From: Amphiscolops sp. MND2022
Lineage: Eukaryota
DNA: 64,000 nucleotides
Reading direction: 5' to 3'
NCBI GenBank assembly: GCA_964187785.1
Contig: OZ076409.1
Coordinates: forward strand, 67,270,001 to 67,334,000
Shown here: in pieces, positions 1,679 through 62,800 of the stretch
How the letters are laid out: each line of letters begins with the position of its first letter
How positions within the stretch are numbered: the first letter of the stretch is position 1
Translations under genes and position numbers: made by a program
Notes under the pieces: generated by a model
The model's database searches: none
The model's input: only the letters and a program-made list of their open reading frames with translations
Told to the model about the DNA's origin: nothing

Positions 1679-3648
1679 TGCATGTTCTTCAGAGTGGTGC
1701 ACTTAAAGTCCTTATGATTTGTCAATACTCTTACAGAAACTTCAATGAGAAAATATTTCCATGTTGCATCCGACTTGAAAGGTGCATCCTAAATTTGGCG
1801 CCAATATGAAGTATTTATGTTCAGGTGCTTTCGAAAATTAATTGATTTCCATTTAATTGCAATTAAATTGGTTTAAAATTTAATTGTATAAACTTAGGCA
1901 ATTTAAAAATTGATGGATTTGAATGCAATTAATTGCAATTATTTTTTAGCAAAACCAAATGCCAGTAACTGACAAATTTCAAGTATTGAAGTATAAAATC
2001 CATGTATTAGCTGTTCGTATAAAGGGAATTACAATAATTTACCAAATTTTATTTTGCCAACATCTGATATCATAGAAAGGTTTTTCAGTTTTGCCGGATA
2101 TGCGTAGCCCATAGACCTTGAAATGCAACTTTTTTGAAAGTGAATCATTTTTTCTGGAAAATTGGTGTTTTTTTCAATTGATTGATTGGTTAGTTTGAGA
2201 AAATTCAATTCATTGATAGGAAAGAAAATAATCGATTGGTTCACGTGCACTTAATTTTTGAAATTCCCTGTATAGGTTTGACTCGTGTGAAGGTTTTAAT
2301 GTCTCGCGTACTTTCATCTTCTAATAATCTCTTCCACCGGAAATGTCGCAAAAAAAGGGAAAACGCTTGTGACTTTCGCTAACGATCTCTTTTTCAAAAA
2401 GGAATTACCTGAAAGTCAGAGGGCTGCGTTAGACCTATTCGTACTCAGTATTCAAATCCAAAGATGAGAAAAACTCTCCGTCTCGTACCTACATCATGTC
2501 TATCAGAACCTCGCCCAAAACAAAAAACTCGACGTTCAGAACCTGAAAAACATACTAAGGATCCCCTTTGGCTATCTTAGTGTTTTTAATTTGGATTTTT
2601 TCGGCACTGTGACACTGTTCAAAATTCTCAATTTTCGTTTTCTTTCCAAAATCTTTTCAATCCCTCCAAGATTTGCAATCTACCCTTCTTTTTTGCAATA
2701 TTTTGCCTCAAACTATTTTGCCTCAATATTTTGAGTTTCAAAAAGCCTCTTTTACAATTTTAAAACGTTGGGCTTCCTGAGACTTAGATATGGCGGCGAC
2801 TTTGACCGTTCCCGGCGTGTTTGCATGTTCTTCAGAGTGGTGCACTTAAAGTCCTTATGATTTGTCAATACTCTTACAGAAACTTCAATGAGAAAATATT
2901 TCCATGTTGCATCCGACTTGAAAGGTGCATCCTAAATTTGGCGCCAATATGAAGTATTTATGTTCAGGTGCTTTCGAAAATTAATTGATTTCCATTTAAT
3001 TGCAATTAAATTGGTTTAAAATTTAATTGTATAAACTTAGGCAATTTAAAAATTGATGGATTTGAATGCAATTAATTGCAATTATTTTTTAGCAAAACCA
3101 AATGCCAGTAACTGACAAATTTCAAGTATTGAAGTATAAAATCCATGTATTAGCTGTTCGTATAAAGGGAATTACAATAATTTACCAAATTTTATTTTGC
3201 CAACATCTGATATCATAGAAAGGTTTTTCAGTTTTGCCGGATATGCGTAGCCCATAGACCTTGAAATGCAACTTTTTTGAAAGTGAATCATTCTTTCTGG
3301 AAAATTGGTGTTTTTTTCAATTGATTGATTGGTTAGTTTGAGAAAATTCAATTCATTGATAGGAAAGAAAATAATCGATTGGTTCACGTGCACTTAATTT
3401 TTGAAATTCCCTGTATAGGTTTGACTCGTGTGAAGGTTTTAATGTCTCGCGTACTTTCATCTTCTAATAATCTCTTCCACCGGAAATGTCGCAAAAAAAG
3501 GGAAAACGCTTGTGACTTTCGCTAACGATCTCTTTTTCAAAAAGGAATTACCTGAAAGTCAGAGGGCTGCGTTAGACCTATTCGTACTCAGTATTCAAAT
3601 CCAAAGATGAGAAAAACTCTCCGTCTCGTACCTACATCATGTCTATCA
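1360..3648. repeat. Direct tandem duplication, 1143-bp unit x2
   Basis: 1360-2505 matches 2503-3648 at offset 1143 (ORFs at 2029 and 3172 in the track are near-identical). I found only two substitutions by eye. There is a 3-bp TCA overlap at the junction. Confidence 0.95.
1822..2270. mobile_element. Putative degenerate hAT-type MITE (second copy 2965-3413 through the duplication)
   Basis: CAGGTGCTTTCGAAAATTAATTG vs reverse complement CAGGGAATTTCAAAAATTAAGTG (18/23). Flanks are TTTATGTT / TATAGGTT (6/8). Internal ATTGCAATTA motifs resemble those of the intact hAT. Confidence 0.35.
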
Positions 3649-24394: not shown

Positions 24395-25536
24395 GTATGA
24401 GTATATAAAGGTTCATTTTCCTTGAAGACAACATTTATCTCGTATAAGGGACTAGGTAATTTTGGCAACTGGCATTTTCTCTCAAAATTATATTCGTCAA
24501 AATTTAAAAAGTTTTAGTGAAGAGGCCATTTCAAAACTTGGCTTTCAAAAATTTGAGTAGCTAACATTGTCCTGGAAAATTAAATGCATTTATTTTTGTT
24601 TTGTCTCAATATTTCTTTAAAAAATTTCAAAATTAGCAATATATCTTTAATTTTCGTTTCTCTTCTGGAAATTTTCGATTAAACCTAAGAATTAGGTAGG
24701 TACTTAATTTGGATACTTTAACGACCAATTTGCAGGAATCAAATCTTGGACAATTTTGATGAAGAACTTACAAAACAGTGATCTTTTAAATCTGAGCATT
24801 TTCGTCTCGAAAATTTGGAAGATTAACCCCAAAATTTAAAAATGCCGCTTAACCAGCGGCATCAGGAAACTCGTTGCAGAAAAGCGTCATTGATGTACTC
24901 GGGTCATTGAAATTTTTCTGAAACCAATAACAATTCCTGTCGTCAAAAAATGGCATCATCAAAGAACGTCGTCTACTTTCCGATATTTTCAAGGGCAAGT
25001 CAACAATGAAAAAAGCCTTTTAGTAACCAGGTTTTGGTCACATTCCTCACCGATTCATTGATTTTGAATGTTCGAAACATTTTCGATGCATTAATTGTTC
25101 AATTTATTCACCTGCCACAGCTGAGTCAATTGTTTCGTCCTTTCAAGAAACTCATGAAACATTTTTGTTCGAAAAAAATTGTCGCTGCAGTTTTGCATTA
25201 TGAAAAAAGTTCCAATGCTGAGTTGAAAATAGAAACGTTTGAAAATTGCTGTTGATATTGAAATTGATTTGAATTTTACGACGAATTGATTCACGCAAAT
25301 GAAATGTAATTCAGTCACGCAACCAACAAAAGTTATTTTCGAGGACGCTTTGTCTGCCTGTGCCTGCTTTGTAAATAGGAAGTAAACAGACAATAATCTA
25401 CAATACTGTATTAAAAGCAGGGTTGTAAATAAAAACGTTCTTCTCAATAAAAAACGTTTTTCATGTTTAAAACGCTTTAAACTGTTTTAAAACACTTTGT
25501 TTTAAATTCGTGGAAATTCCAATAAAGAGATTCAAT

Positions 25537-27764
25537 CAGGGATTGGAAACAAATAATTTAAATAGTATTGTTGACTGGCAATCAATTATTTTATTGCTTT
25601 TTTGAGTAAAATAAACAATTGCAATTATTGCAATTATTTTTCTCCCGGAAAAATTATTTTAATGAAAAAGTAAATTGTAAAAACGGAGAAGTAAAATGTA
25701 AAGTAAACTGAAAACTGAGTCTAGCGTAAATCTACGATTGATTGAGCAGTTTCTCAACATCTTTCACTCCAAAACTCTCGATTTGCTTTAAGAAAAAGTA
25801 ACATTTCAAGACGAAGCGGGCTGGTTCGCATTCGTAGCTCCCCCAAAATTAGCTTCGCCGCGCTGAATAAACGTTCTGCTTTGTTTGAAGTACCAGGGAC
25901 CCATTTGAAGTCCGATTCAGCGACTTTTCGTCGTTTGTTATCCAAAATTTGCTCGGCAAAGCTCATTTCCGACGAGTCCGATTGAATCACCGCCATCCCA
26001 CCCAAATCACCAATAGCGGTTTTCTCTGCGTCGGTAAGGTTACTCTTTGCGTTGCCTTCGGACAGCTTGACAATCGCGCTCTCAAAATTAGCGGACACAA
26101 CTATTGAAGCGTTTGCGTTGAGATGCGATGCAGTTTGTGGAAATTTCTCTATTACAGCATCAAACAATGCTCTAATCTCAAACAGGCTCAGTTTGTCATT
26201 TTGCAATTTCAAAGTAATCGAGTCAAGTTTCTTCAGGTCTTCATAGACACATTCGATTTCAATCTTTTCTATAGCAGTTGGCAAGAATTCTGCAATTTCG
26301 GGATTAGTCACATCAAGAAAAAGATAAAGTTCCAGGAAGCGAGAAATCATTTTGAATGCAGACGACCACCTTGTTTGGTTTCGCATCACAGGTCGTAAAT
26401 CGGTTTTCATCCGTAAAGCGGCTGCGTTCTTCAATGTACAGAGCCTTTTCATAAGACTGTAAATCTTCTGTAAAATTTCCTCGTAGCCAGCAAGAATATG
26501 GTTTACAGCTAGATTGAAGAGATGACTGGCGCAGCCAATCATCGGTACTTTCAGAATTCTTGAAATTGCTTTGTTGCGATTTTCGTTGTCGCAAACAATA
26601 AATCCAATGTTATTGCGGCTTTTCCCAAAAATGGCCAATGTTGCATCAATAAATTGGACATGACTATCTGCCGTAAGGTCTTCTTCGTTTAAGAGAGGAG
26701 CAAATGCAAGTAATGGACTTTTCTGTCCTCCTAAACAGAAACTTGGAAAATCACCAAATTCCACCAAAAAATCAAAATGACTGGTATCCGTATGCATGAG
26801 CATGGTAGGATCGGACCGACTGACTTTTATCGAAGATAATATTTGTGATAAGATAGTTTACACCCCTGCAATTAATTGTACAATTAATTGCAATTAATTG
26901 CTTTATGAAACAAATTTGCAAGAAAATTAAAAATGTACCTTGATGTTCATAAACAGCAAAAACACCAAGGTAATGAGTGCTACCATCAGTCCAACCGTCA
27001 ATGATGAGTCCAAACTTTGTCGGCAAACTGCTAGCAACCGAATTCTCCACCTCACGTTCCAATTTGTACATGTACTCTTGTAGAGTTTTCCCAGTAACAA
27101 GATCCAAGTTCGTACACTTCTTTACCAAATCAGAATCCGGAAACAAAAATTCGCGTGCTCCAGTAATGATCCAATCGATCCAGCAATAAATATTGTTGGC
27201 CTTCCTCGTGGCAGCCATTCCCGTCGAATTCGTAATAACGGTGTTAGTCTCCATGACGTGATGTGCATGATCAGGATGATCTGATTGAATATGGTTCAAT
27301 AAATTGCTGTAACCTGCGCCGTCTTTCTGCTTTCGCTTCCGTTCACATTTACATTTGTACTCGTTTGGTGCGACTTTTGTAAAGTATGACTTGACTAAAG
27401 CCTTCTTCGATAATGACTGTGGCATTTTATTTAATTTCTTGTAACAAAAGAGGTGGTGTCTGACTGTGATGTGTGTATGATGCAATGCAAACAATCCGGC
27501 ATTGAAAGTTGGCAAATTAAACACGTGATTTCCCGCTGTGCAAATATTGACCACAACACATCACGCTCTGAAAATTTCTGCGTCACTCAATGCAATGCGT
27601 TAGGCCTGTATATATTGAAATCATTATAAAAAGTTATTGACAATTTTTGGTAAAATTATTTTTTTCAGAAAATAAATTATTGTTATTTCTGAAGGCCAAA
27701 AATAAATAATTTCAATAAATTTATTGCAATTATTTTTTTCGCAATAAATACTTTCCAATCCCTG
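25537..27764 (-). mobile_element. hAT DNA transposon, full-length, apparently autonomous (2228 bp)
   Basis: Perfect 13-bp TIRs CAGGGATTGGAAA, perfect 8-bp TSD GATTCAAT (25529-25536 / 27765-27772), and subterminal ATTGCAATTA/TTATT motifs. Confidence 0.97.
25754..27425 (-). CDS. hAT transposase, 2 exons (27425-26939 and 26730-25754), 487 aa
   Basis: A 208-bp phase-1 GT-AG intron (26938-26731) joins the two frames as HYLGVFAVYEHQG|GQKSPLLAFAPL. BED finger (YKCKC..NLLNHIQSDH), DDE residues (IIDGW, VCDN, AERLFS), CASH, TRWSS and a C-terminal dimerisation motif are present. Confidence 0.9.
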
Positions 27765-27979
27765 GATTCAATACCAAAAAATATCGAAAAATTCAACGAA
27801 GAATCATCATTGAGAGCATCATCGCTACTAGTAAAATGCAAGTTTTTACACTTTCTCTGGATTGAGGCGATTTCTGATGTCCTTTCTGATGCACTTATAT
27901 AGAGGCAGAAACTATGGGTGAGTTGTTAACATTTGACCAACCATCCAAGCGCAACTGAATTCAATAAAAATTGTGGTGT

Positions 27980-55728: not shown

Positions 55729-56882
55729 TTTTACGTCTGCAATGTATGATAACAAAATCACTTACCAAGCTTTACGACGGCCTGGTTGACAACTTGCGGG
55801 CACGTCTAAGAATTGTTTCTGCGAGAAAGGCACTTGCAAAATCCACTACTTTCAATACCTTCAAAATGTCCCTTCTTTTCAAGTTCTGGACAATACCTAT
55901 TGTTTAAACAAGTTTCCGAGGTCGGTGAAGCAATTACTGCATCTGTGACCACTTTTCGACTTGTTTAGAAAACATAGAATTTACTGACTTGAAGAGTTTT
56001 CTCATAAAACTCACTAAACCGTTGACTCGTCGATGAAATTGGGGAGTAACAAATCGTAGTCGAATAACTTTGCCAAAAGATTGAAAGTCTTCTGTCTCAA
56101 AACCTTTTCAAGCTAAAAATTGCCAGAAATGCAATAATAATATATTGTTGGAATCTCGAATCCAGTATCAAAACAAGAACAACTTCGAAATAGCTCTATA
56201 ATAGCCCAAGTTAACTTGAATACTCAAACGATAAAGTTCCGAACAATTACTTTCTTGGTTGCTTGAACAAGGAATATCGACCGTTTTCAATCTCACCTTT
56301 TGGGTCTCTCTTTCAAGAAGGAGTTAACTTGGGTTGGTAACAATACAGGAAATTACACAAACTGTCATGTTTACAATCAATTATGAGGGCACCATAAAGG
56401 TTCTATAATGATACATAAAGTTAACAAACTACCCATTTTCGAGGCGATAAAGCATATAAAGATATTGGTATATCAACATCTGAAGCATACATTTACACGA
56501 TTTTGTGGTCCTTTAATATATTTGTTATTTGCCCACCAAAGCTTCTATCAGGTTACAAATGCTCTACCGGCTTCCGCCTGGACTAGATATAACCAAATAT
56601 GACCACTTGACAGGTTAAATACACAAGCAGGATGATAAATTACCAAATTTGTACTATATTAGAAGAAATCTCTGATTTTGCCCCAGAAAAAAATATTTTT
56701 CAAATTTTTGCCTTCGATTTCCGGTTTTTTGCCCTAGATGGTTTAGTTGGCCAAAAATATGTCGGTTGCCAACCATCCTAGAGTGTGATTCCCAAAACTC
56801 AATCTTTTACAGCCACCAATTAGGGGCTATTTTAGGGTATTTTTCGAATAGCTGATTTCAAGTTGTTTTCGAGGCGCCAACA
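55729..56882 (-). repeat. 3' LTR of the BEL/Pao element (~1154 bp)
   Basis: 55729-56245 matches 63484-64000 with 4 substitutions. The minus-strand start TGTTGGCGCC at 56882 follows a purine-rich GAAAACGGGG tract. The right boundary is inferred from this motif because the partner LTR is cut off. Confidence 0.8.
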
Positions 56883-59800
56883 ATGCCGGCCCCGTTTTCA
56901 GACTGAAAACGCTCATCGAAGACTGGCGCCAACTTTACTACAGGTCGTTTGAAGGTACCGTCATGAGTTTTGATAAGCACTGATCTCACTACACCATCTT
57001 TTGCTGGATAAATTTCTTGAATACGTGCCATCTTGTAATGAGACCTTTTCACATTGTTATCCACCAACCAAACTAAGTCGCCAACTTCAACATTGGCTTC
57101 TTGTTTACTCCATTGGTTTCTGACATGAGTTTGGGGTATGTATTCTGCAACCCATCGTTTCCAAATCATATCGGCATAAGCCTGACACGACCGAAACATC
57201 TTGCGACGATTGGAATAAACTTCAGCATTGGGGATAAAGGGTACACAAATATTCGCACGACCAAGAATAAAATGATTAGGCGTAAGGGCCTCCAAATCAG
57301 CAGGATCATCTTTTGCTGGGGTAATAGGACGTGCATTCAATGTTTGTTCAACCAAGCACATGGTTGTAGTCAAAGATTCATCAGTCAGAGATCGATATCC
57401 CAGAATTGCCATCATTGCTTTCTTGCAACTTCTGACCAATCGTTCCCAAACACCCCCAAAATGAGGTGCCCCAGGAGGGTTAAATTTCCATGCAATATGC
57501 TTTTGAGCCAATTCTGATGTAATTTGATCGTGATTCCACGAGTTGATGTACTCTTTCAACTCTCTCGCGGATCCAACAAAGTTAGTACCATTGTCACTTA
57601 TGATGGTTGTTGGCTTGCCACGTCTGGCGATAAATCTGTTCATAGCTACCAAGCAAGAATCTGTGTCGAGGCTTCGAACCACTTCGATATGCACTGCTCT
57701 GGTAGTCAAACATGTAAACAAACAGCACCATCGTTTCATGGATCGTCGTAACAATTTAACTTCGAATGGACCGAAATAATCCATTCCAACGTGGGTAAAG
57801 GGATATGACTGATAATCGAGCCTCTCGGCAGGTAAATCGACCATGAGAGGAGATTTTATCTGCGCACGTAATTTGCGACAGTAAACACAATTGCTTTTAA
57901 TGCTCCTCAAAGCATTTCGTAATCCCAAAATCCAAAACTTCTGTTGTATTACGCTTCTAACATACTCCACTCCCTCATGGTTGTGTTCCAGATGTAAATC
58001 ACGTAACATTACACTAACAATATCGTGTTTTGTGGATAAAAGAATTGGATGTCGCTGTTGGAAGCTCAATTTTGCATGTTTGATGCGACCTCTTATTCGA
58101 ATCATACCGCATTCATCAAAAAATGGAGAAAATTTTGCCAAATCTCCACCTTTGCTTGTCTTACCAAACATTTGCTTCCCATCATACACTTCAGGGAAGG
58201 TTTCTCGTTGAATTAATTTCAGAATCTTTTTTTCCGCTCGTTGCAGTTCACCTGGAAATAATACCTTAGATTGACTCTTGAACTTCAAACGTAAGCAAAA
58301 TGCAATAACTCGCACACATTTGGAAAAACTGCTAAACCTGCTCCAATCAACTATTGGCTCCTGAGTCATGCTTGCGTTCGCAATTACTGCAACTGCAGCA
58401 TGGTCATCAGGCACCAAGTTAATTGGTTGCAGAGACGAAGGCCAATCGTCAGGATGGTCTTTGAGCCAAATTGGTCCAGCTAACCAATCACTTTCAGTCA
58501 ATTTCTCTATAGTAATTCCACGCGTCCCAATATCAGATGGATTCATTTCACCTTTAACGTGCTTCCACTCGTCAATTGTGGAGTTTTCCAATATCTCAGC
58601 TGCTCTGTTAGCTACAAAAACATTTTGTTTTTTGTCAGCTGAGTGTAACCATTGAAGCACAGTAACTGAATCAGTCCAATGAGTAACGCTGTCAATCCGT
58701 AAATCATGTTCTTGAACAATCAAGGTTCTCAATCTGACTGAATACACTGCTGCTTGCAGCTCTAGACGAGGTATAGACAGTTGTTTGATGGGAGCTATTC
58801 TACATTTGCCCAAAACAAAAGAGACTTCGACTCCATCATTGACTTCTGCTCGAAAATAAGCGACGATGCACATGGCTTCTAGAGACGCATCACTGAAGAT
58901 GTGCAGTTGAACGTTTTTGGGGTTATCAGAGAAATAATTTCTAGGAAGTGAGGTGTTTTTAATTGTTTGCATTTCTGTCACCCAATCTAGGAATACCTGT
59001 TTATCATCATCCGCAATTTTTTCATCCCATGATTGGCCAAAGCGAATCCAGATACTTTTCAAAAGCATTCTCATCCGCATAGTGAAAGGTGCAAAAATTC
59101 CCATGGGATCAAAAACTGAGGAAACAAAAGATAACACTACTCGTTGAGTAATGTCTTGCGGACATTCTTTGTTAGGTCCTCTACATACTTGCAGACAATC
59201 TTTATCGATTATCCACTCCAAACCTAGAATGGCAGATGATTCTGCATTAAGCGTGAATTCGTTCGCTTCTAATCGATCTTCTACTGGGATTATTTCCAAA
59301 ACTTCCGGGCTGTTGCTAGCCCACTTCTTCAATGTGAATCCACTACGTTTGAGAGTCTCTACCAACTCTTGGTAACAGGTGATAGCTGCCTGAGGACTAT
59401 TAACACTTTTCACTAAATCGTCCATGTAGAAGTTTCTATCTATGGTCGATGTTGCTGAAGGAAAATCGACTTTATTGTCTCTTCCTACCTGTTGGAATCC
59501 GTAGTTCGCACAAGTTGGAGAGCTTTTTGCACCAAACACGTGTCTGTTGTACTCGAAGATTCCGATGCTGTCCTCAGGACTATCACGCCATAGGAAACGA
59601 AGTACTTTACATTCCTCTTTCGGAACTGCTACTTGCAAAAACATGGACTCAATATCAGCGGCAATAGCTACTTGGTGTTCCCTAAACCTAAAAACAATTC
59701 CAACTAAATTTCGCAACAAATCAGGTCCGCTGAGAAGTTTGTCATTCAAAGAAACGCCTTTAAACTTTGAAGCTGCGTTACAAACTCTTCTGACCTTGCC

Positions 59801-62800
59801 TGGTTTGTGTGGGTGCTTGACTGGATGGTGAGGTAAATACCATTGCATTTCATTCTCTGTACTCACAATTTCTTCCTGTTACAGTTTCCGTACAAAATGA
59901 TTTTCTAAGTCTTTCTCAATGGTAGCTTTGTGAGCTTCTTTCAACTCTGAATCCTTACTTAATCTTCTCTCCATTGACAGAAACTGTTGGTAAGCAGAAT
60001 AATAATTGTTCGGCAAGTTAGGGTTGTCATCGGCCCAGAGGAGTCCTACTTCATATCGTTCGCCGTTATGCTTGGTAGTTTTTTCCAAGATTGCCAGGGC
60101 TCTCTTTTCTTCCTTAGAACGTCCCGAGACATCACAAACAGACGCGTATGTCTCCATGTCCCACCATTTCTTCATTTGATCCGCTAAAGTATCCGAAGAC
60201 ACGGAGAGGTTACACGTTGCTCCCAAACAGTTTGTTTCTGTTTTGGGTAATGCTCCACTCACTGTCCATCCCAAAGAAGTTTTGACCGCCCAAGGTTCAT
60301 TCCTATCACCTGAATTATATTCAAGAGGTCTGATCAAGTGATACGCGTCTTGACCAAGAATGACCTTGACATCAGCCATCGAGACCTTTATATCCGGCAA
60401 ATTTTTCAAATAGGAATAAATTTCTTTCAATTTTGTAAAATCGTAGACTTTGTCACCGACATTCAAGTTTGGGTGACTGCAGAAGGCCAGTTCTTCTCCC
60501 GCAGTATCTGTTTCACTTGGACCAATTCTGGCGGTAACAATTTCAGTCTTCATGTCAGATAGCCCATGAATTCCAGCTACCGACATCACGGATTCTTTAC
60601 CTTTCAGCTTCAAAAGGTTGACCAAAGTTTTGTCCATAAATGATACCGTGGATCCAGTGTCACAAAGAGCTATCGTTTCAACGCTTCGTTTCTCATTTCC
60701 AATTGAAATTGGTATCAATTGTATGAAACCACTGCTACCTGTTGAGAGCATTGAAGAACCGCCGGCCCTGTTTTGAGACAAGGGTTCCTCCGATTTCTTA
60801 TCTTTTTCGGTTCTAGGAGAATCCGAATGCAACAGCTTGTTGTGTTTCTTGGTGCATCCATTTACTCCACAAACTCTGTCCGACTTGCAGTCCTTCATCA
60901 AATGTGAATTTAGACAACAGAAACAAAGTTTATATTTCTTCAGTGTTTCGTATCTCTCATTAACACCTTGTTGTTTGAACTTCGTACACGTCCAGATTTT
61001 ATGGTCGCCATCCTTCAATGGACATTGCTTTGTTGATGCAGGTGTTGATTTGCTCTGCTCATTAGCAGCAAATGTTGAGGTTTTCACTTTCTCCGTATTA
61101 GCGTAGCCTTTTTTCTCTGATTGAGACTTGAATTGCACTGTCATTTCATCGTGAACATAAGCAACTTCGTTCAGCCATTCGCTAAATTTGCAAAGATCAG
61201 CGTGGTAGTAGCCTTTGCTCTTCGCAAGAAAAAACCACTTGGTTTTCAATTCAGGTGGTAACTTCCTCAACGCTGAATTCAAGACGGACTCAGAATACAA
61301 ATCTCCAGTGAATCCGAACTGTTTCAACACATTAACGCATGTAGTATTCAACTGTGCGTACTTTATAATAGCCGCTGAATCATGCGACTTGATGAACGGA
61401 CTCAAATGAATTTGCTTCATCTGAGCATTGACAATGGTTTGCGGCCGTCCGAAATTAGTAACCAAAGCATTCCACGCTGCACTATACATGACTCCTGAGT
61501 ATCCGAGACCCGCAATAGCCGCCTTGGCCTTGCCTTTAACAAGTGTTTTTAAATGACTCATTTTTGCATTGTCATCAATTGGCGCATTATGGATGGTAGC
61601 TGTGAACAAACTGGACCATTCTGGCCATTCCAGTGGGTCTCCATGAAATTCAGATAATTTCAATTTAGGTAAGCTTGATTGAACAAAATGGACCGGTGAT
61701 TGTACAGGTACTGCTGGTGTGAAGGAAGGAATACCACTTTCTATTTTGAATGAGGGTTTCGCAAAGTCACATTTAGGCTTCGGTTTCTCATTGCCTTGCT
61801 GAAGCAGGGCGTTTGTTTTCGGAAACGTAATTCCAGTGGTTTTTCTCTGTGGTGACTTACTGGTACCTCGGCCTTGAGTTCGCGATAATAGGTTTTTGTG
61901 GTCAAATGTTTGAAGCGGTTTACTTGACTCACCTTTATTTTCTACTTCTCTGCTAGATTCCTTCGGTTGCGAAAAGCACTTATCTAAGTCTTCAACACCT
62001 TGGTCTAACCAACTTTTAATGTCACTGTTTTTGTCCTCCTCCAGAGTGAGAGACATCAAGCTAGGACATATTGAAGAAGCTCGAATTGATCCTTCAGCCT
62101 CTTCTATTTGCAATTGCATTTGCTGCCTTTCAAAAGCCTTCTTACGCTTCAAATCAGCATTTTCCGATTCTGCGTGCAACTCTTGGAGCCTTTCCTCGAT
62201 CTGTTGTCGTTCCAAATTTCTCTCCATTTCCCTACGCGTTTTCTCTAGTTCCAACTCACGTTCTCTTTTTTCTATTTCCATTTGTAATTTTTGATCCATC
62301 AGATCAGCTTGTATCTCCAATCGTCTTCGCTCGCTCATTTTCGAAGCATTGGAGCCTATCTTTGAACCGGCCTTTTTTGCTGGCTCACTCATAGCTAATG
62401 TTCTTGTAGGGGAGTAGTCTACTAAAGAAAATCTTTTCTGGGATCCAAGAGTAGCTGATTGAGGTTGAAAAGATGGGTTATCAAACCGGTCGTTAATTTT
62501 GAGAAATAGTGTTGATTGATTTGCCTCTTTAAGCAATTTCAATCCTTTGTCAAGTGTTTCATTCGCCTTGGATTTTTCCAAGGCATGAGAACGGTTCTCA
62601 TCGTCTTTTGATATCTTCGAACTTTCAAACCCAGACACTTCAGGTGTTTCTATGTTTCCCAATGGATCATTTGCTGCTATATTGCAGCTATCAATATAGT
62701 TCAGAGCGTCAGTCATTGCCTGTTGAACGATAGAGTTCATTTCTGTGACAATTTTTTCGGCGTGTGATAGAGTTGACAAAGCATCAGGCTTGAGACAATT

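What the first reader, a model, noticed from the sequence alone, without database searches (positions are those of the whole stretch)
25537..27764. Intact young hAT whose compact transposase resembles oomycete/protist-type hATs: horizontal-transfer candidate
Seen: perfect TIRs, a perfect TSD and an uninterrupted spliced 487-aa ORF in a neighbourhood where almost everything else is decayed. From memory of the family: the motif string KFGLIIDGW..HYLGVFA..PLLAFAPL..DN..NKA....L.VPMIGCASH.FNLAV..LRP..RN.TRWSS..PxTSN..ERLFS..LEMLLFLK.N...W is what I associate with short hAT transposases abundant in Phytophthora-like oomycetes, diatoms and early-diverging fungi, rather than typical animal Ac/Buster/Tip proteins. 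Inference: a recent, possibly still active element acquired horizontally, which is plausible for an aquatic animal with algal or protist partners.
Basis: partly seen in the sequence, partly recalled or inferred. Interest (0 to 1): 0.72.

Follow-up and report, generated by a model that had tools for sequence, protein, structure and literature searches.

The report
Ageing hAT transposon in an acoel
This is a real cut-and-paste (hAT) jumping gene in the genome of an acoel worm, but it is a moderately old member of a very large resident group of such elements, and nothing tested supports a recent arrival from a protist.

Summary
The anatomy is real. The element spans 25537-27764, with 13-bp perfect inverted ends (CAGGGATTGGAAA), an 8-bp target duplication (GATTCAAT) and a predicted two-exon, 487-codon transposase gene on the minus strand. 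The catalytic residues align with the Hermes hAT transposase.

It is not young. It is the only full-length copy among 12 in a 1.07-Gb genome. It carries about 2% private changes, like its 11 internally deleted siblings. One is a private 2-bp deletion that frameshifts the last 12 codons.

The host is an acoel: its BiP is 91% identical to that of Convolutriloba macropyga.

The same genome holds a huge radiation of this hAT clade, with thousands of first-look candidates. At least 35 loci have uninterrupted frames of 465 codons or more. These families share CAGGG ends and subterminal ATTGCAAT motifs with the element.

The nearest relatives of the protein are these paralogs (47-48%). Nothing outside the species exceeds 43%.

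Trees cannot place the family. Recent horizontal transfer is unsupported; ancient transfer of the clade stays open. Splicing has no RNA evidence.

The parts
25529..25536 (.). Left copy of the 8-bp target-site duplication GATTCAAT
   Evidence: identical to 27765-27772. All 11 sibling copies also have 8-bp duplications, 8 perfect and 3 with one mismatch.
25537..25549 (+). Left terminal inverted repeat CAGGGATTGGAAA (13 bp perfect). The family state is 14 bp, and position 14 carries a private T>C change.
25537..27764 (-). Whole hAT element, 2228 bp. It is the only full-length copy of a 12-copy family in this assembly.
25618..25636 (+). Two overlapping-adjacent copies of the palindrome-cored subterminal motif ATTGCAATTA. 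They are candidate transposase-binding sites (inference).
   Evidence: 14 matches in the window against 0.56 expected. Similar subterminal sequence occurs in resident paralog families.
25754..26730 (-). Exon 2, including the stop at 25754-25756. It carries the second catalytic D (VCDNEN), GCASH, TRWSS, the catalytic E (AERLFS) and the C-terminal hAT region.
25768..25770 (-). Site of a private 2-bp deletion (CC on the + strand). It causes a frameshift four codons before the stop. The family's C-terminus ...FWGVKDVEKLLNQS reads ...FWSERC in this copy.
   Evidence: every sibling copy covering the site, 11 of 11, has CCCC where the window has CC. table 4: runs X1, X3 and X5 carry the CC.
26731..26938 (-). 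Predicted intron, 208 nt, GT..AG with a pyrimidine-rich 3' end. It is absent from all paralogous families examined. There is no RNA evidence.
   Evidence: splice sites are kept in copies C1b, C10 and C5a
26778..26913 (.). 136-nt piece inside the intron made of two segments (26778-26824 and 26825-26913) of another repeat family. That family occurs at many loci at 93-100% identity.
   Evidence: (loose ends at 26778, 26824/5, 26913)
26939..27425 (-). Exon 1. It carries a BED-like zinc finger (CKC...HIQSDH) and the first catalytic D (LIIDGW).
   Evidence: zf-BED E 0.0046, below cut-off; zf-BED in 5 of 19 clade members, best 4.9e-6
27723..27732 (+). Subterminal ATTGCAATTA motif at the right end
   Evidence: (D11: 25625-25644 and 27721-27740 are 95% alike)
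27752..27764 (-). Right terminal inverted repeat (13 bp perfect)
27765..27772 (.). Right copy of the target-site duplication GATTCAAT

Best explanation
The stretch is a class II cut-and-paste transposon of the hAT superfamily, lying in a chromosome of an acoel worm.

Mechanism (inferred from the family). Its transposase would bind the CAGGG termini and the subterminal ATTGCAAT-type motifs. It would excise the element with a DDE/RNase-H-like active site, and reinsert it at a staggered 8-bp cut, which gives the duplication.

History (shown by copy comparison). One burst produced at least 12 copies. Eleven lost internal parts, each by a different deletion, as happens in abortive gap repair. All copies, the full-length one included, have since drifted by about 2% each.

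The window copy is therefore a relic of that burst and not a newcomer. It keeps the catalytic residues, but it has a private C-terminal frameshift and needs an unverified splice.

The family is one of dozens of related compact hAT families that have diversified in this genome. Several of those are far younger and intact.
For: hAT membership:
- 8-bp duplication and CAGGG ends.
- A profile of the clade hits Hermes transposase at E 2.7e-12. D (IDGW / IDLW), D (DN / DR), CxxH, W and E (ERLFS / ERTFS) are all aligned.

Single full-length copy and 11 deletion derivatives, each with its own target duplication.

Equal age of the copies:
- Private divergence is 1.7-2.1% in the window copy against 1.0-3.8% in the siblings, with almost no shared substructure.
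- Private coding changes are 9 non-synonymous to 6 synonymous. The dead copies together have 55 to 29.
- There is a private frameshift.

Resident radiation:
- 2725 and 1306 first-look candidates for the two exons, and 124 and 150 scored matches at 30-53% identity, apart from copies of the element's own family. 35 loci have open frames of 465 codons or more without stops.
- The paralog elements are 1.84-2.5 kb, with perfect 8-bp duplications and CAGGG[A/G] ends.
- One intact multi-copy family (L054-L057) has the same first 12 terminal bases.
- Non-coding ends are 73-82% alike between families.
- ORF GC and GC3 lie inside the resident range.

Host is an animal and an acoel. hAT elements make up 0.9% of another acoel genome (PMC6451197).
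Against: - Splicing of the intron is untested. No RNA run holds the element, and without splicing the frame stops after exon 1.
- The trees do not place the family inside the resident clade with support. The constrained tree is only 1.85 log-likelihood units better than the free one, and the oomycete constraint is about as good.
- Copy counts come from one assembly. A sediment metagenome holds a copy with a different left flank, so more insertions exist in nature.
- Other acoel genomes could not be searched.
Confidence: 0.8

Rival explanations
1. This particular family entered the acoel lineage by horizontal transfer from a microbial eukaryote (oomycete-like, algal partner or prey). It then produced a small burst.
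For: - Oomycete proteins are in the same clade, and the nearest named Atlas cluster is Oomycota.
- The family does not fall inside the 12-member resident clade in the free trees.
- The constraint 'window + oomycetes' is not rejected (p-AU 0.545).
- Unnamed clade members sit on gene-dense, short-intron contigs that look like microbial eukaryotes.
Against: - The best outside identity is only 42-43%, and to oomycetes 30-39%. Resident paralogs reach 47-48%.
- The constraint 'window + resident clade' is at least as good (p-AU 0.573).
- Terminal repeats, subterminal motifs and non-coding ends are shared with resident families, and a sister family exists in the genome.
- Base composition matches the resident families.
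- The copies are about 2% diverged, so nothing is recent.
Confidence: 0.1
2. The 208-nt 'intron' is a disabling insertion of filler DNA and is not spliced. The family then never encoded its own working enzyme after that event, and its copies were moved in trans by a related resident transposase.
For: - All paralogous families examined are intronless at this site.
- The insert contains 136 nt of another repeat family.
- No RNA evidence exists.
- An intact multi-copy resident family has the same first 12 terminal bases, CAGGGATTGGAA.
- A GT..AG pair that restores the frame in a variable loop could arise by chance (inference).
Against: - The splice restores exact colinearity with the paralogs.
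- Donor and acceptor are intact in all three other copies that cover them.
- The 3' end has a good pyrimidine tract.
- Both exons stayed open in the full-length copy despite about 2% drift.
Confidence: 0.2
3. The copy is still an active autonomous element, the master of its family.
For: - It is the only copy with a complete coding capacity.
- The catalytic D, D, E, CxxH and W are present.
- The private amino-acid changes lie at variable alignment columns.
- Hermes ends about 11 residues after the equivalent LFLN motif, so the truncated C-terminus might be tolerated (inference).
- A copy at another site exists in a sediment metagenome.
Against: - No copy is closer than about 1% to the family's majority state, and the window copy is as diverged as the dead ones.
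- The ratio of non-synonymous to synonymous private changes (9:6) is not clearly different from that of the dead copies.
- It has a private frameshift.
- No transcript was found.
Confidence: 0.1

Closest known systems
Hermes transposase of Musca domestica (hAT superfamily; PDB 2bw3, 4d1q, 6dww, 8edg)
   Same: The clade profile matches at E 2.7e-12. The catalytic D, D and E, the CxxH motif and the conserved W are aligned, and the C-terminal ERxFS...LFL region also aligns. The element has an 8-bp target duplication and short inverted ends.
   Different: - The similarity is distant and seen only with a profile.
- This protein is shorter: 487 codons against 612.
- Pfam zf-BED and Dimer_Tnp_hAT both score below their cut-offs on this protein.
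Compact hAT-like proteins of oomycetes (Phytophthora nicotianae L917_21431, Lagenidium giganteum N0F65_010608)
   Same: They share the clade and the motif string. Identity is 39% and 30% over 74-98% of exon 2. The two oomycete proteins group together at 99% support.
   Different: - They are no closer to the element than the acoel's own paralogs are.
- No inverted ends with a matching duplication were found around the Lagenidium gene, though only strict criteria were tried.
- The Lagenidium locus has GC 0.51 against 0.37-0.42 here.
Resident hAT families of the same genome (for example loci L036, L037, L040, L041-45, L051/52, L054-57, L058, L071)
   Same: - 38-48% protein identity.
- The same size class (1.84-2.5 kb), CAGGG[A/G] ends and 8-bp duplications.
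- Related subterminal sequence and the same base composition.
   Different: They are intronless. Several have multiple copies that are identical or over 99% identical, with perfect duplications. The window family has an intron, a single full-length copy and about 2% drift.
Argonauta hians (cephalopod) hypothetical protein Ahia01_000558600
   Same: It is a member of the same clade in another animal, with 36% identity to exon 2. It groups at 99% support with a second resident acoel lineage, L070/L071.
   Different: It belongs to a different sub-lineage from the window family. No inverted ends were found with the strict scan.

Membership tests
hAT superfamily of DNA transposons | 8-bp target-site duplication | tested here: met
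   GATTCAAT lies on both sides. All 11 sibling copies and the paralog families also have 8-bp duplications.
hAT superfamily of DNA transposons | Short terminal inverted repeats beginning (C/T)A(G/A)NG | tested here: met
   CAGGGATTGGAAA, 13 bp perfect, 14 bp in the family.
hAT superfamily of DNA transposons | DDE catalytic core of the RNase-H type, with the CxxH and W motifs of hAT enzymes | tested here: met
   The clade profile hits Hermes at E 2.7e-12 with all motifs aligned. The window protein has LIIDGW, VCDNEN, GCASH, TRWSS and AERLFS. The test was by sequence only; no structure was predicted.
hAT superfamily of DNA transposons | N-terminal BED-type zinc finger | tested here: inconclusive
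   zf-BED scores E 0.0046, 17.4 bits against a cut-off of 20.6. 5 of 19 clade members match, best 4.9e-6. The pattern is C-x-C...H-x4-H rather than C-x2-C.
hAT superfamily of DNA transposons | C-terminal hAT dimerisation region (PF05699) | tested here: inconclusive
   E 0.0028, 17.9 bits against a cut-off of 21.4. The region aligns weakly to the Hermes C-terminus. In this copy the last 12 codons are replaced by a frameshift.
Named hAT subgroups (Ac, Buster, Tip100 and the finer Repbase/Dfam groups) | Placement in a tree with reference transposases, and the subgroup's target-site consensus | not testable with these tools
   No reference set of named hAT transposases was on hand. Only Hermes (Ac group) could be compared, and it is distant.
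Horizontally transferred transposon | Much higher similarity to a distant taxon than host divergence allows, patchy absence in the host's relatives, or a tree that conflicts with host phylogeny with support | tested here: not met
   - Best outside identity is 42-43%, which is below the intragenomic paralogs.
- The tree is unresolved and both constraints are accepted.
- Absence in other acoels could not be tested.
Active autonomous element | Near-identical copies, an intact and expressed gene, insertion polymorphism | tested here: not met
   - There are no near-identical copies, and private divergence is about 2%.
- The C-terminus is frameshifted.
- No RNA holder was found.
- Polymorphism was not resolved. 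One different insertion was seen in a sediment metagenome.

The most novel reading that the evidence does not exclude
The clade of compact hATs has moved between microbial eukaryotes and marine animals. It is shared by this acoel, a cephalopod, oomycetes and unnamed gene-dense microbial eukaryotes. Under this reading the window family, which no tree ties firmly to the resident acoel clade, is a separate arrival. Its family-specific intron was created by inserted repeat DNA after arrival.
Probability: 0.12. Interest if true: 0.55.

Novelty: new member of a known kind. Interest (0 to 1): 0.22.

Why it matters
As it stands this is routine transposon annotation. It gives a correct boundary, gene model and age for one hAT family in an acoel genome.

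Two side results have some value:
- This acoel genome carries an unusually rich, partly very young radiation of compact intronless hAT families. Those families are better candidates for active elements, or for transposon tools, than the copy flagged.
- The clade has a patchy range (acoel, cephalopod, oomycetes, unnamed microbial eukaryotes). A properly sampled phylogeny could use that range to test old transfers between microbes and marine animals.

The family-specific intron filled with foreign repeat DNA would be a small example of intron gain inside a transposase gene, if RNA data confirm splicing.

Tried and rejected
- Contamination by an alga or protist was rejected. The window lies in a chromosome-scale contig of over 100 Mb and has a BEL/Pao retrotransposon nearby. 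GC is 0.37, like the rest of the genome.
- Another full-length variant was considered, because the reads showed a different sequence at 3-6 times unique depth. The differences are exactly the window copy's private changes, so the contigs follow the family's majority state. Searches in which every candidate was scored found the internal segment only once.
- The top database hits at 91% and 45% (P0001, P0002) were considered as foreign relatives. Members of the first cluster match loci of this genome at 96-100%. P0002 is nearly identical to the resident L040 protein and its element has L040's ends. They come from this species or a very near one.
- Two trees and two AU tests did not resolve the family's position.
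- The literature search for oomycete hATs and transfer gave nothing specific.
- A strict scan for inverted ends around the Argonauta, Lagenidium and metagenome genes found none.
- The large representative-protein search and structure prediction were not run. The word search already excludes close relatives, and the profile match to Hermes settles the superfamily.
- The joined spliced protein was never built or searched. The exons were handled separately by reference.

Full report
**Observation**

The element spans 25537-27764.
- Its ends are 13-bp perfect inverted repeats, CAGGGATTGGAAA. They are flanked by a perfect 8-bp duplication, GATTCAAT.
- The gene lies on the minus strand. An ATG at 27425 opens exon 1, which runs to 26939. 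A GT..AG intron spans 26938-26731. Exon 2 runs from 26730 to the stop at 25754-25756. That gives 162 + 1 + 324 = 487 codons.
- Pfam gives only sub-threshold hits: zf-BED E 0.0046 and Dimer_Tnp_hAT E 0.0028.
- A profile of the clade matches the Hermes hAT transposase at E 2.7e-12, with the two catalytic D, the E, CxxH and the conserved W aligned. The window protein has all of these.

I never built the joined protein.

**The intron**

Every paralogous family examined in this genome is intronless. These paralogs align across the exon junction with no gap. This supports the splice model by homology.
- The intron holds 136 nt (26778-26913) made of two pieces of another repeat family. That family is present at many loci at 93-100% identity.
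- Donor and acceptor sites are kept in the three other copies that cover them.
- No RNA run holds the element, so splicing is inferred and not shown.

**Copy census and age**

The window's genome is 1.07 Gb.
- DNA searches found one full-length copy and 11 copies with different internal deletions. Each has its own 8-bp duplication and a 14-bp family end, CAGGGATTGGAAAT.
- Searches in which every candidate was scored confirm that the internal segment occurs only in the window copy.
- I compared each copy with the majority state of the others. The window copy has 1.7-2.1% private differences and the deleted copies have 1.0-3.8%. Shared substructure is almost absent. This is the pattern of one burst followed by equal decay.
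- Private coding changes in the window copy are 9 non-synonymous to 6 synonymous. The dead copies together have 55 to 29, plus 4 stops.
- The window copy also has a private 2-bp deletion at about 25768-25770. Every sibling copy covering the site, and the contigs of three sequencing runs, carry the two bases.
- With those two bases the C-terminus reads FWGVKDVEKLLNQS, which matches the paralogs. In this copy it reads FWSERC.
- Hermes ends about 11 residues after the equivalent motif, so the effect on function is uncertain (inference).

'Young' is therefore not supported.

**Host**

A BEL/Pao retrotransposon, a kind known only from animals, lies at 56.8-62.8 kb. An intronless BiP gene of the genome is 91% identical to that of the acoel Convolutriloba macropyga, and no other named species in that search exceeds 83% identity. 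The host is therefore an acoel. This rests on one gene.

**Relatives**

- In the 5.8-billion-protein word search the hits at 91% and 45% belong to this species or a very near one. Members of the 91% cluster match loci of this genome at 96-100%. The 45% hit, P0002, is nearly identical to the resident L040 protein and its element carries L040's ends.
- Outside the species the best hits are 42-43%, all unnamed metagenome proteins.
- Named hits are Phytophthora nicotianae (39%), Lagenidium giganteum (30%) and the cephalopod Argonauta hians (36%).
- The nearest named ESM Atlas cluster is Oomycota.
- Two unnamed relatives lie on gene-dense, short-intron contigs that look like a microbial eukaryote.

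So the recalled resemblance to oomycete-type hATs is real.

**The resident radiation**

- Searching the genome with the two exons gave 2725 and 1306 first-look candidates. There were 124 and 150 scored matches at 30-53% identity, apart from copies of the element's own family. 35 loci have open frames of 465 codons or more without stops.
- The paralogs are compact elements of 1.84-2.5 kb, with perfect 8-bp duplications and ends beginning CAGGG[A/G].
- Several families have multiple copies that are identical or over 99% identical.
- One such family (L054-L057) has the same first 12 terminal bases as the window family.
- The non-coding subterminal 60-130 nt of the window element are 73-82% like those of many resident families. 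A deleted copy of a sister family is present, with 47% identity in exon 1 and 76% in the right end.
- The motif ATTGCAATTA occurs 14 times in the window against 0.56 expected. It sits at both subterminal regions of the element.
- GC and GC3 of the ORF (0.42; 0.41-0.44) lie within the resident range.
- hAT elements make up 0.9% of another acoel genome (PMC6451197).

**Phylogeny**

Two maximum-likelihood trees leave the backbone unresolved.
- The window protein sits in a polytomy with four other groups: one unplaced metagenome protein (P0004), a 12-member resident clade (13 rows in the tree, counting P0002), the oomycete pair, and a clade of 16 unnamed proteins.
- Holding it with the resident clade gives a likelihood 1.85 units higher than the free tree (p-AU 0.573).
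- Holding it with the oomycetes gives 1.16 units higher (p-AU 0.545).
- Neither placement is rejected.
- A second resident lineage (L070/L071) groups with Argonauta at 99% support.

**Verdict**

This is a real hAT element, correctly delimited, with a plausible but unverified two-exon gene. It is an ageing relic of a small burst, and it lies within a very large resident radiation of the same clade. Recent horizontal acquisition and current activity are not supported. An ancient transfer of the clade, or of this family, cannot be excluded with the sampling available. The element is a new member of a known kind and of low interest. The young intact sister families are the more promising material.

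Noticed in passing
Loci L041-L045 (five copies, 502 codons), L054-L057 plus further loci listed (open frames of 536 codons), L036/L038, L051/L052, L040/L069: There are several resident hAT families of the same clade. Their copies are identical or over 99% identical, with intact intronless ORFs, perfect 8-bp duplications and CAGGG ends. They look much younger than the window element and are better candidates for active transposons.
   Followed up: partly
window 26778-26913: The predicted intron of the transposase gene contains two joined pieces of another repeat family. That family is found at many loci at 93-100% identity, where it extends further. The piece includes a CAGGGGTG-type hAT end and three TGCAATTAATTG units. 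It may be filler DNA that created the intron.
   Followed up: partly
window 56858-62779, minus strand: A BEL/Pao LTR retrotransposon has two long open frames of 1002 and 966 codons. They carry Peptidase_A17, RVT_1, rve, DUF5641 and DUF1759.
   Followed up: no
window 1854-1941 and 2997-3084: Two pairs of the palindromic motif TAATTGCAATTA lie 76 nt apart and are repeated 1143 nt downstream. This is the same subterminal-type motif as in the hAT element, so it may be another related non-autonomous element or a duplication.
   Followed up: no
window 25537-27772, as seen in runs X5 and X6: A sediment metagenome holds a copy of this family about 2% different from the window copy. Its left flank differs, and it departs from the window sequence at 26778. 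The host species or a relative is probably present in that sediment, or the insertion is polymorphic.
   Followed up: no
Loci L070/L071 and protein P0054: One resident hAT lineage groups at 99% support with a protein of the cephalopod Argonauta hians and an unnamed metagenome protein. The clade is therefore present in at least two animal phyla.
   Followed up: partly
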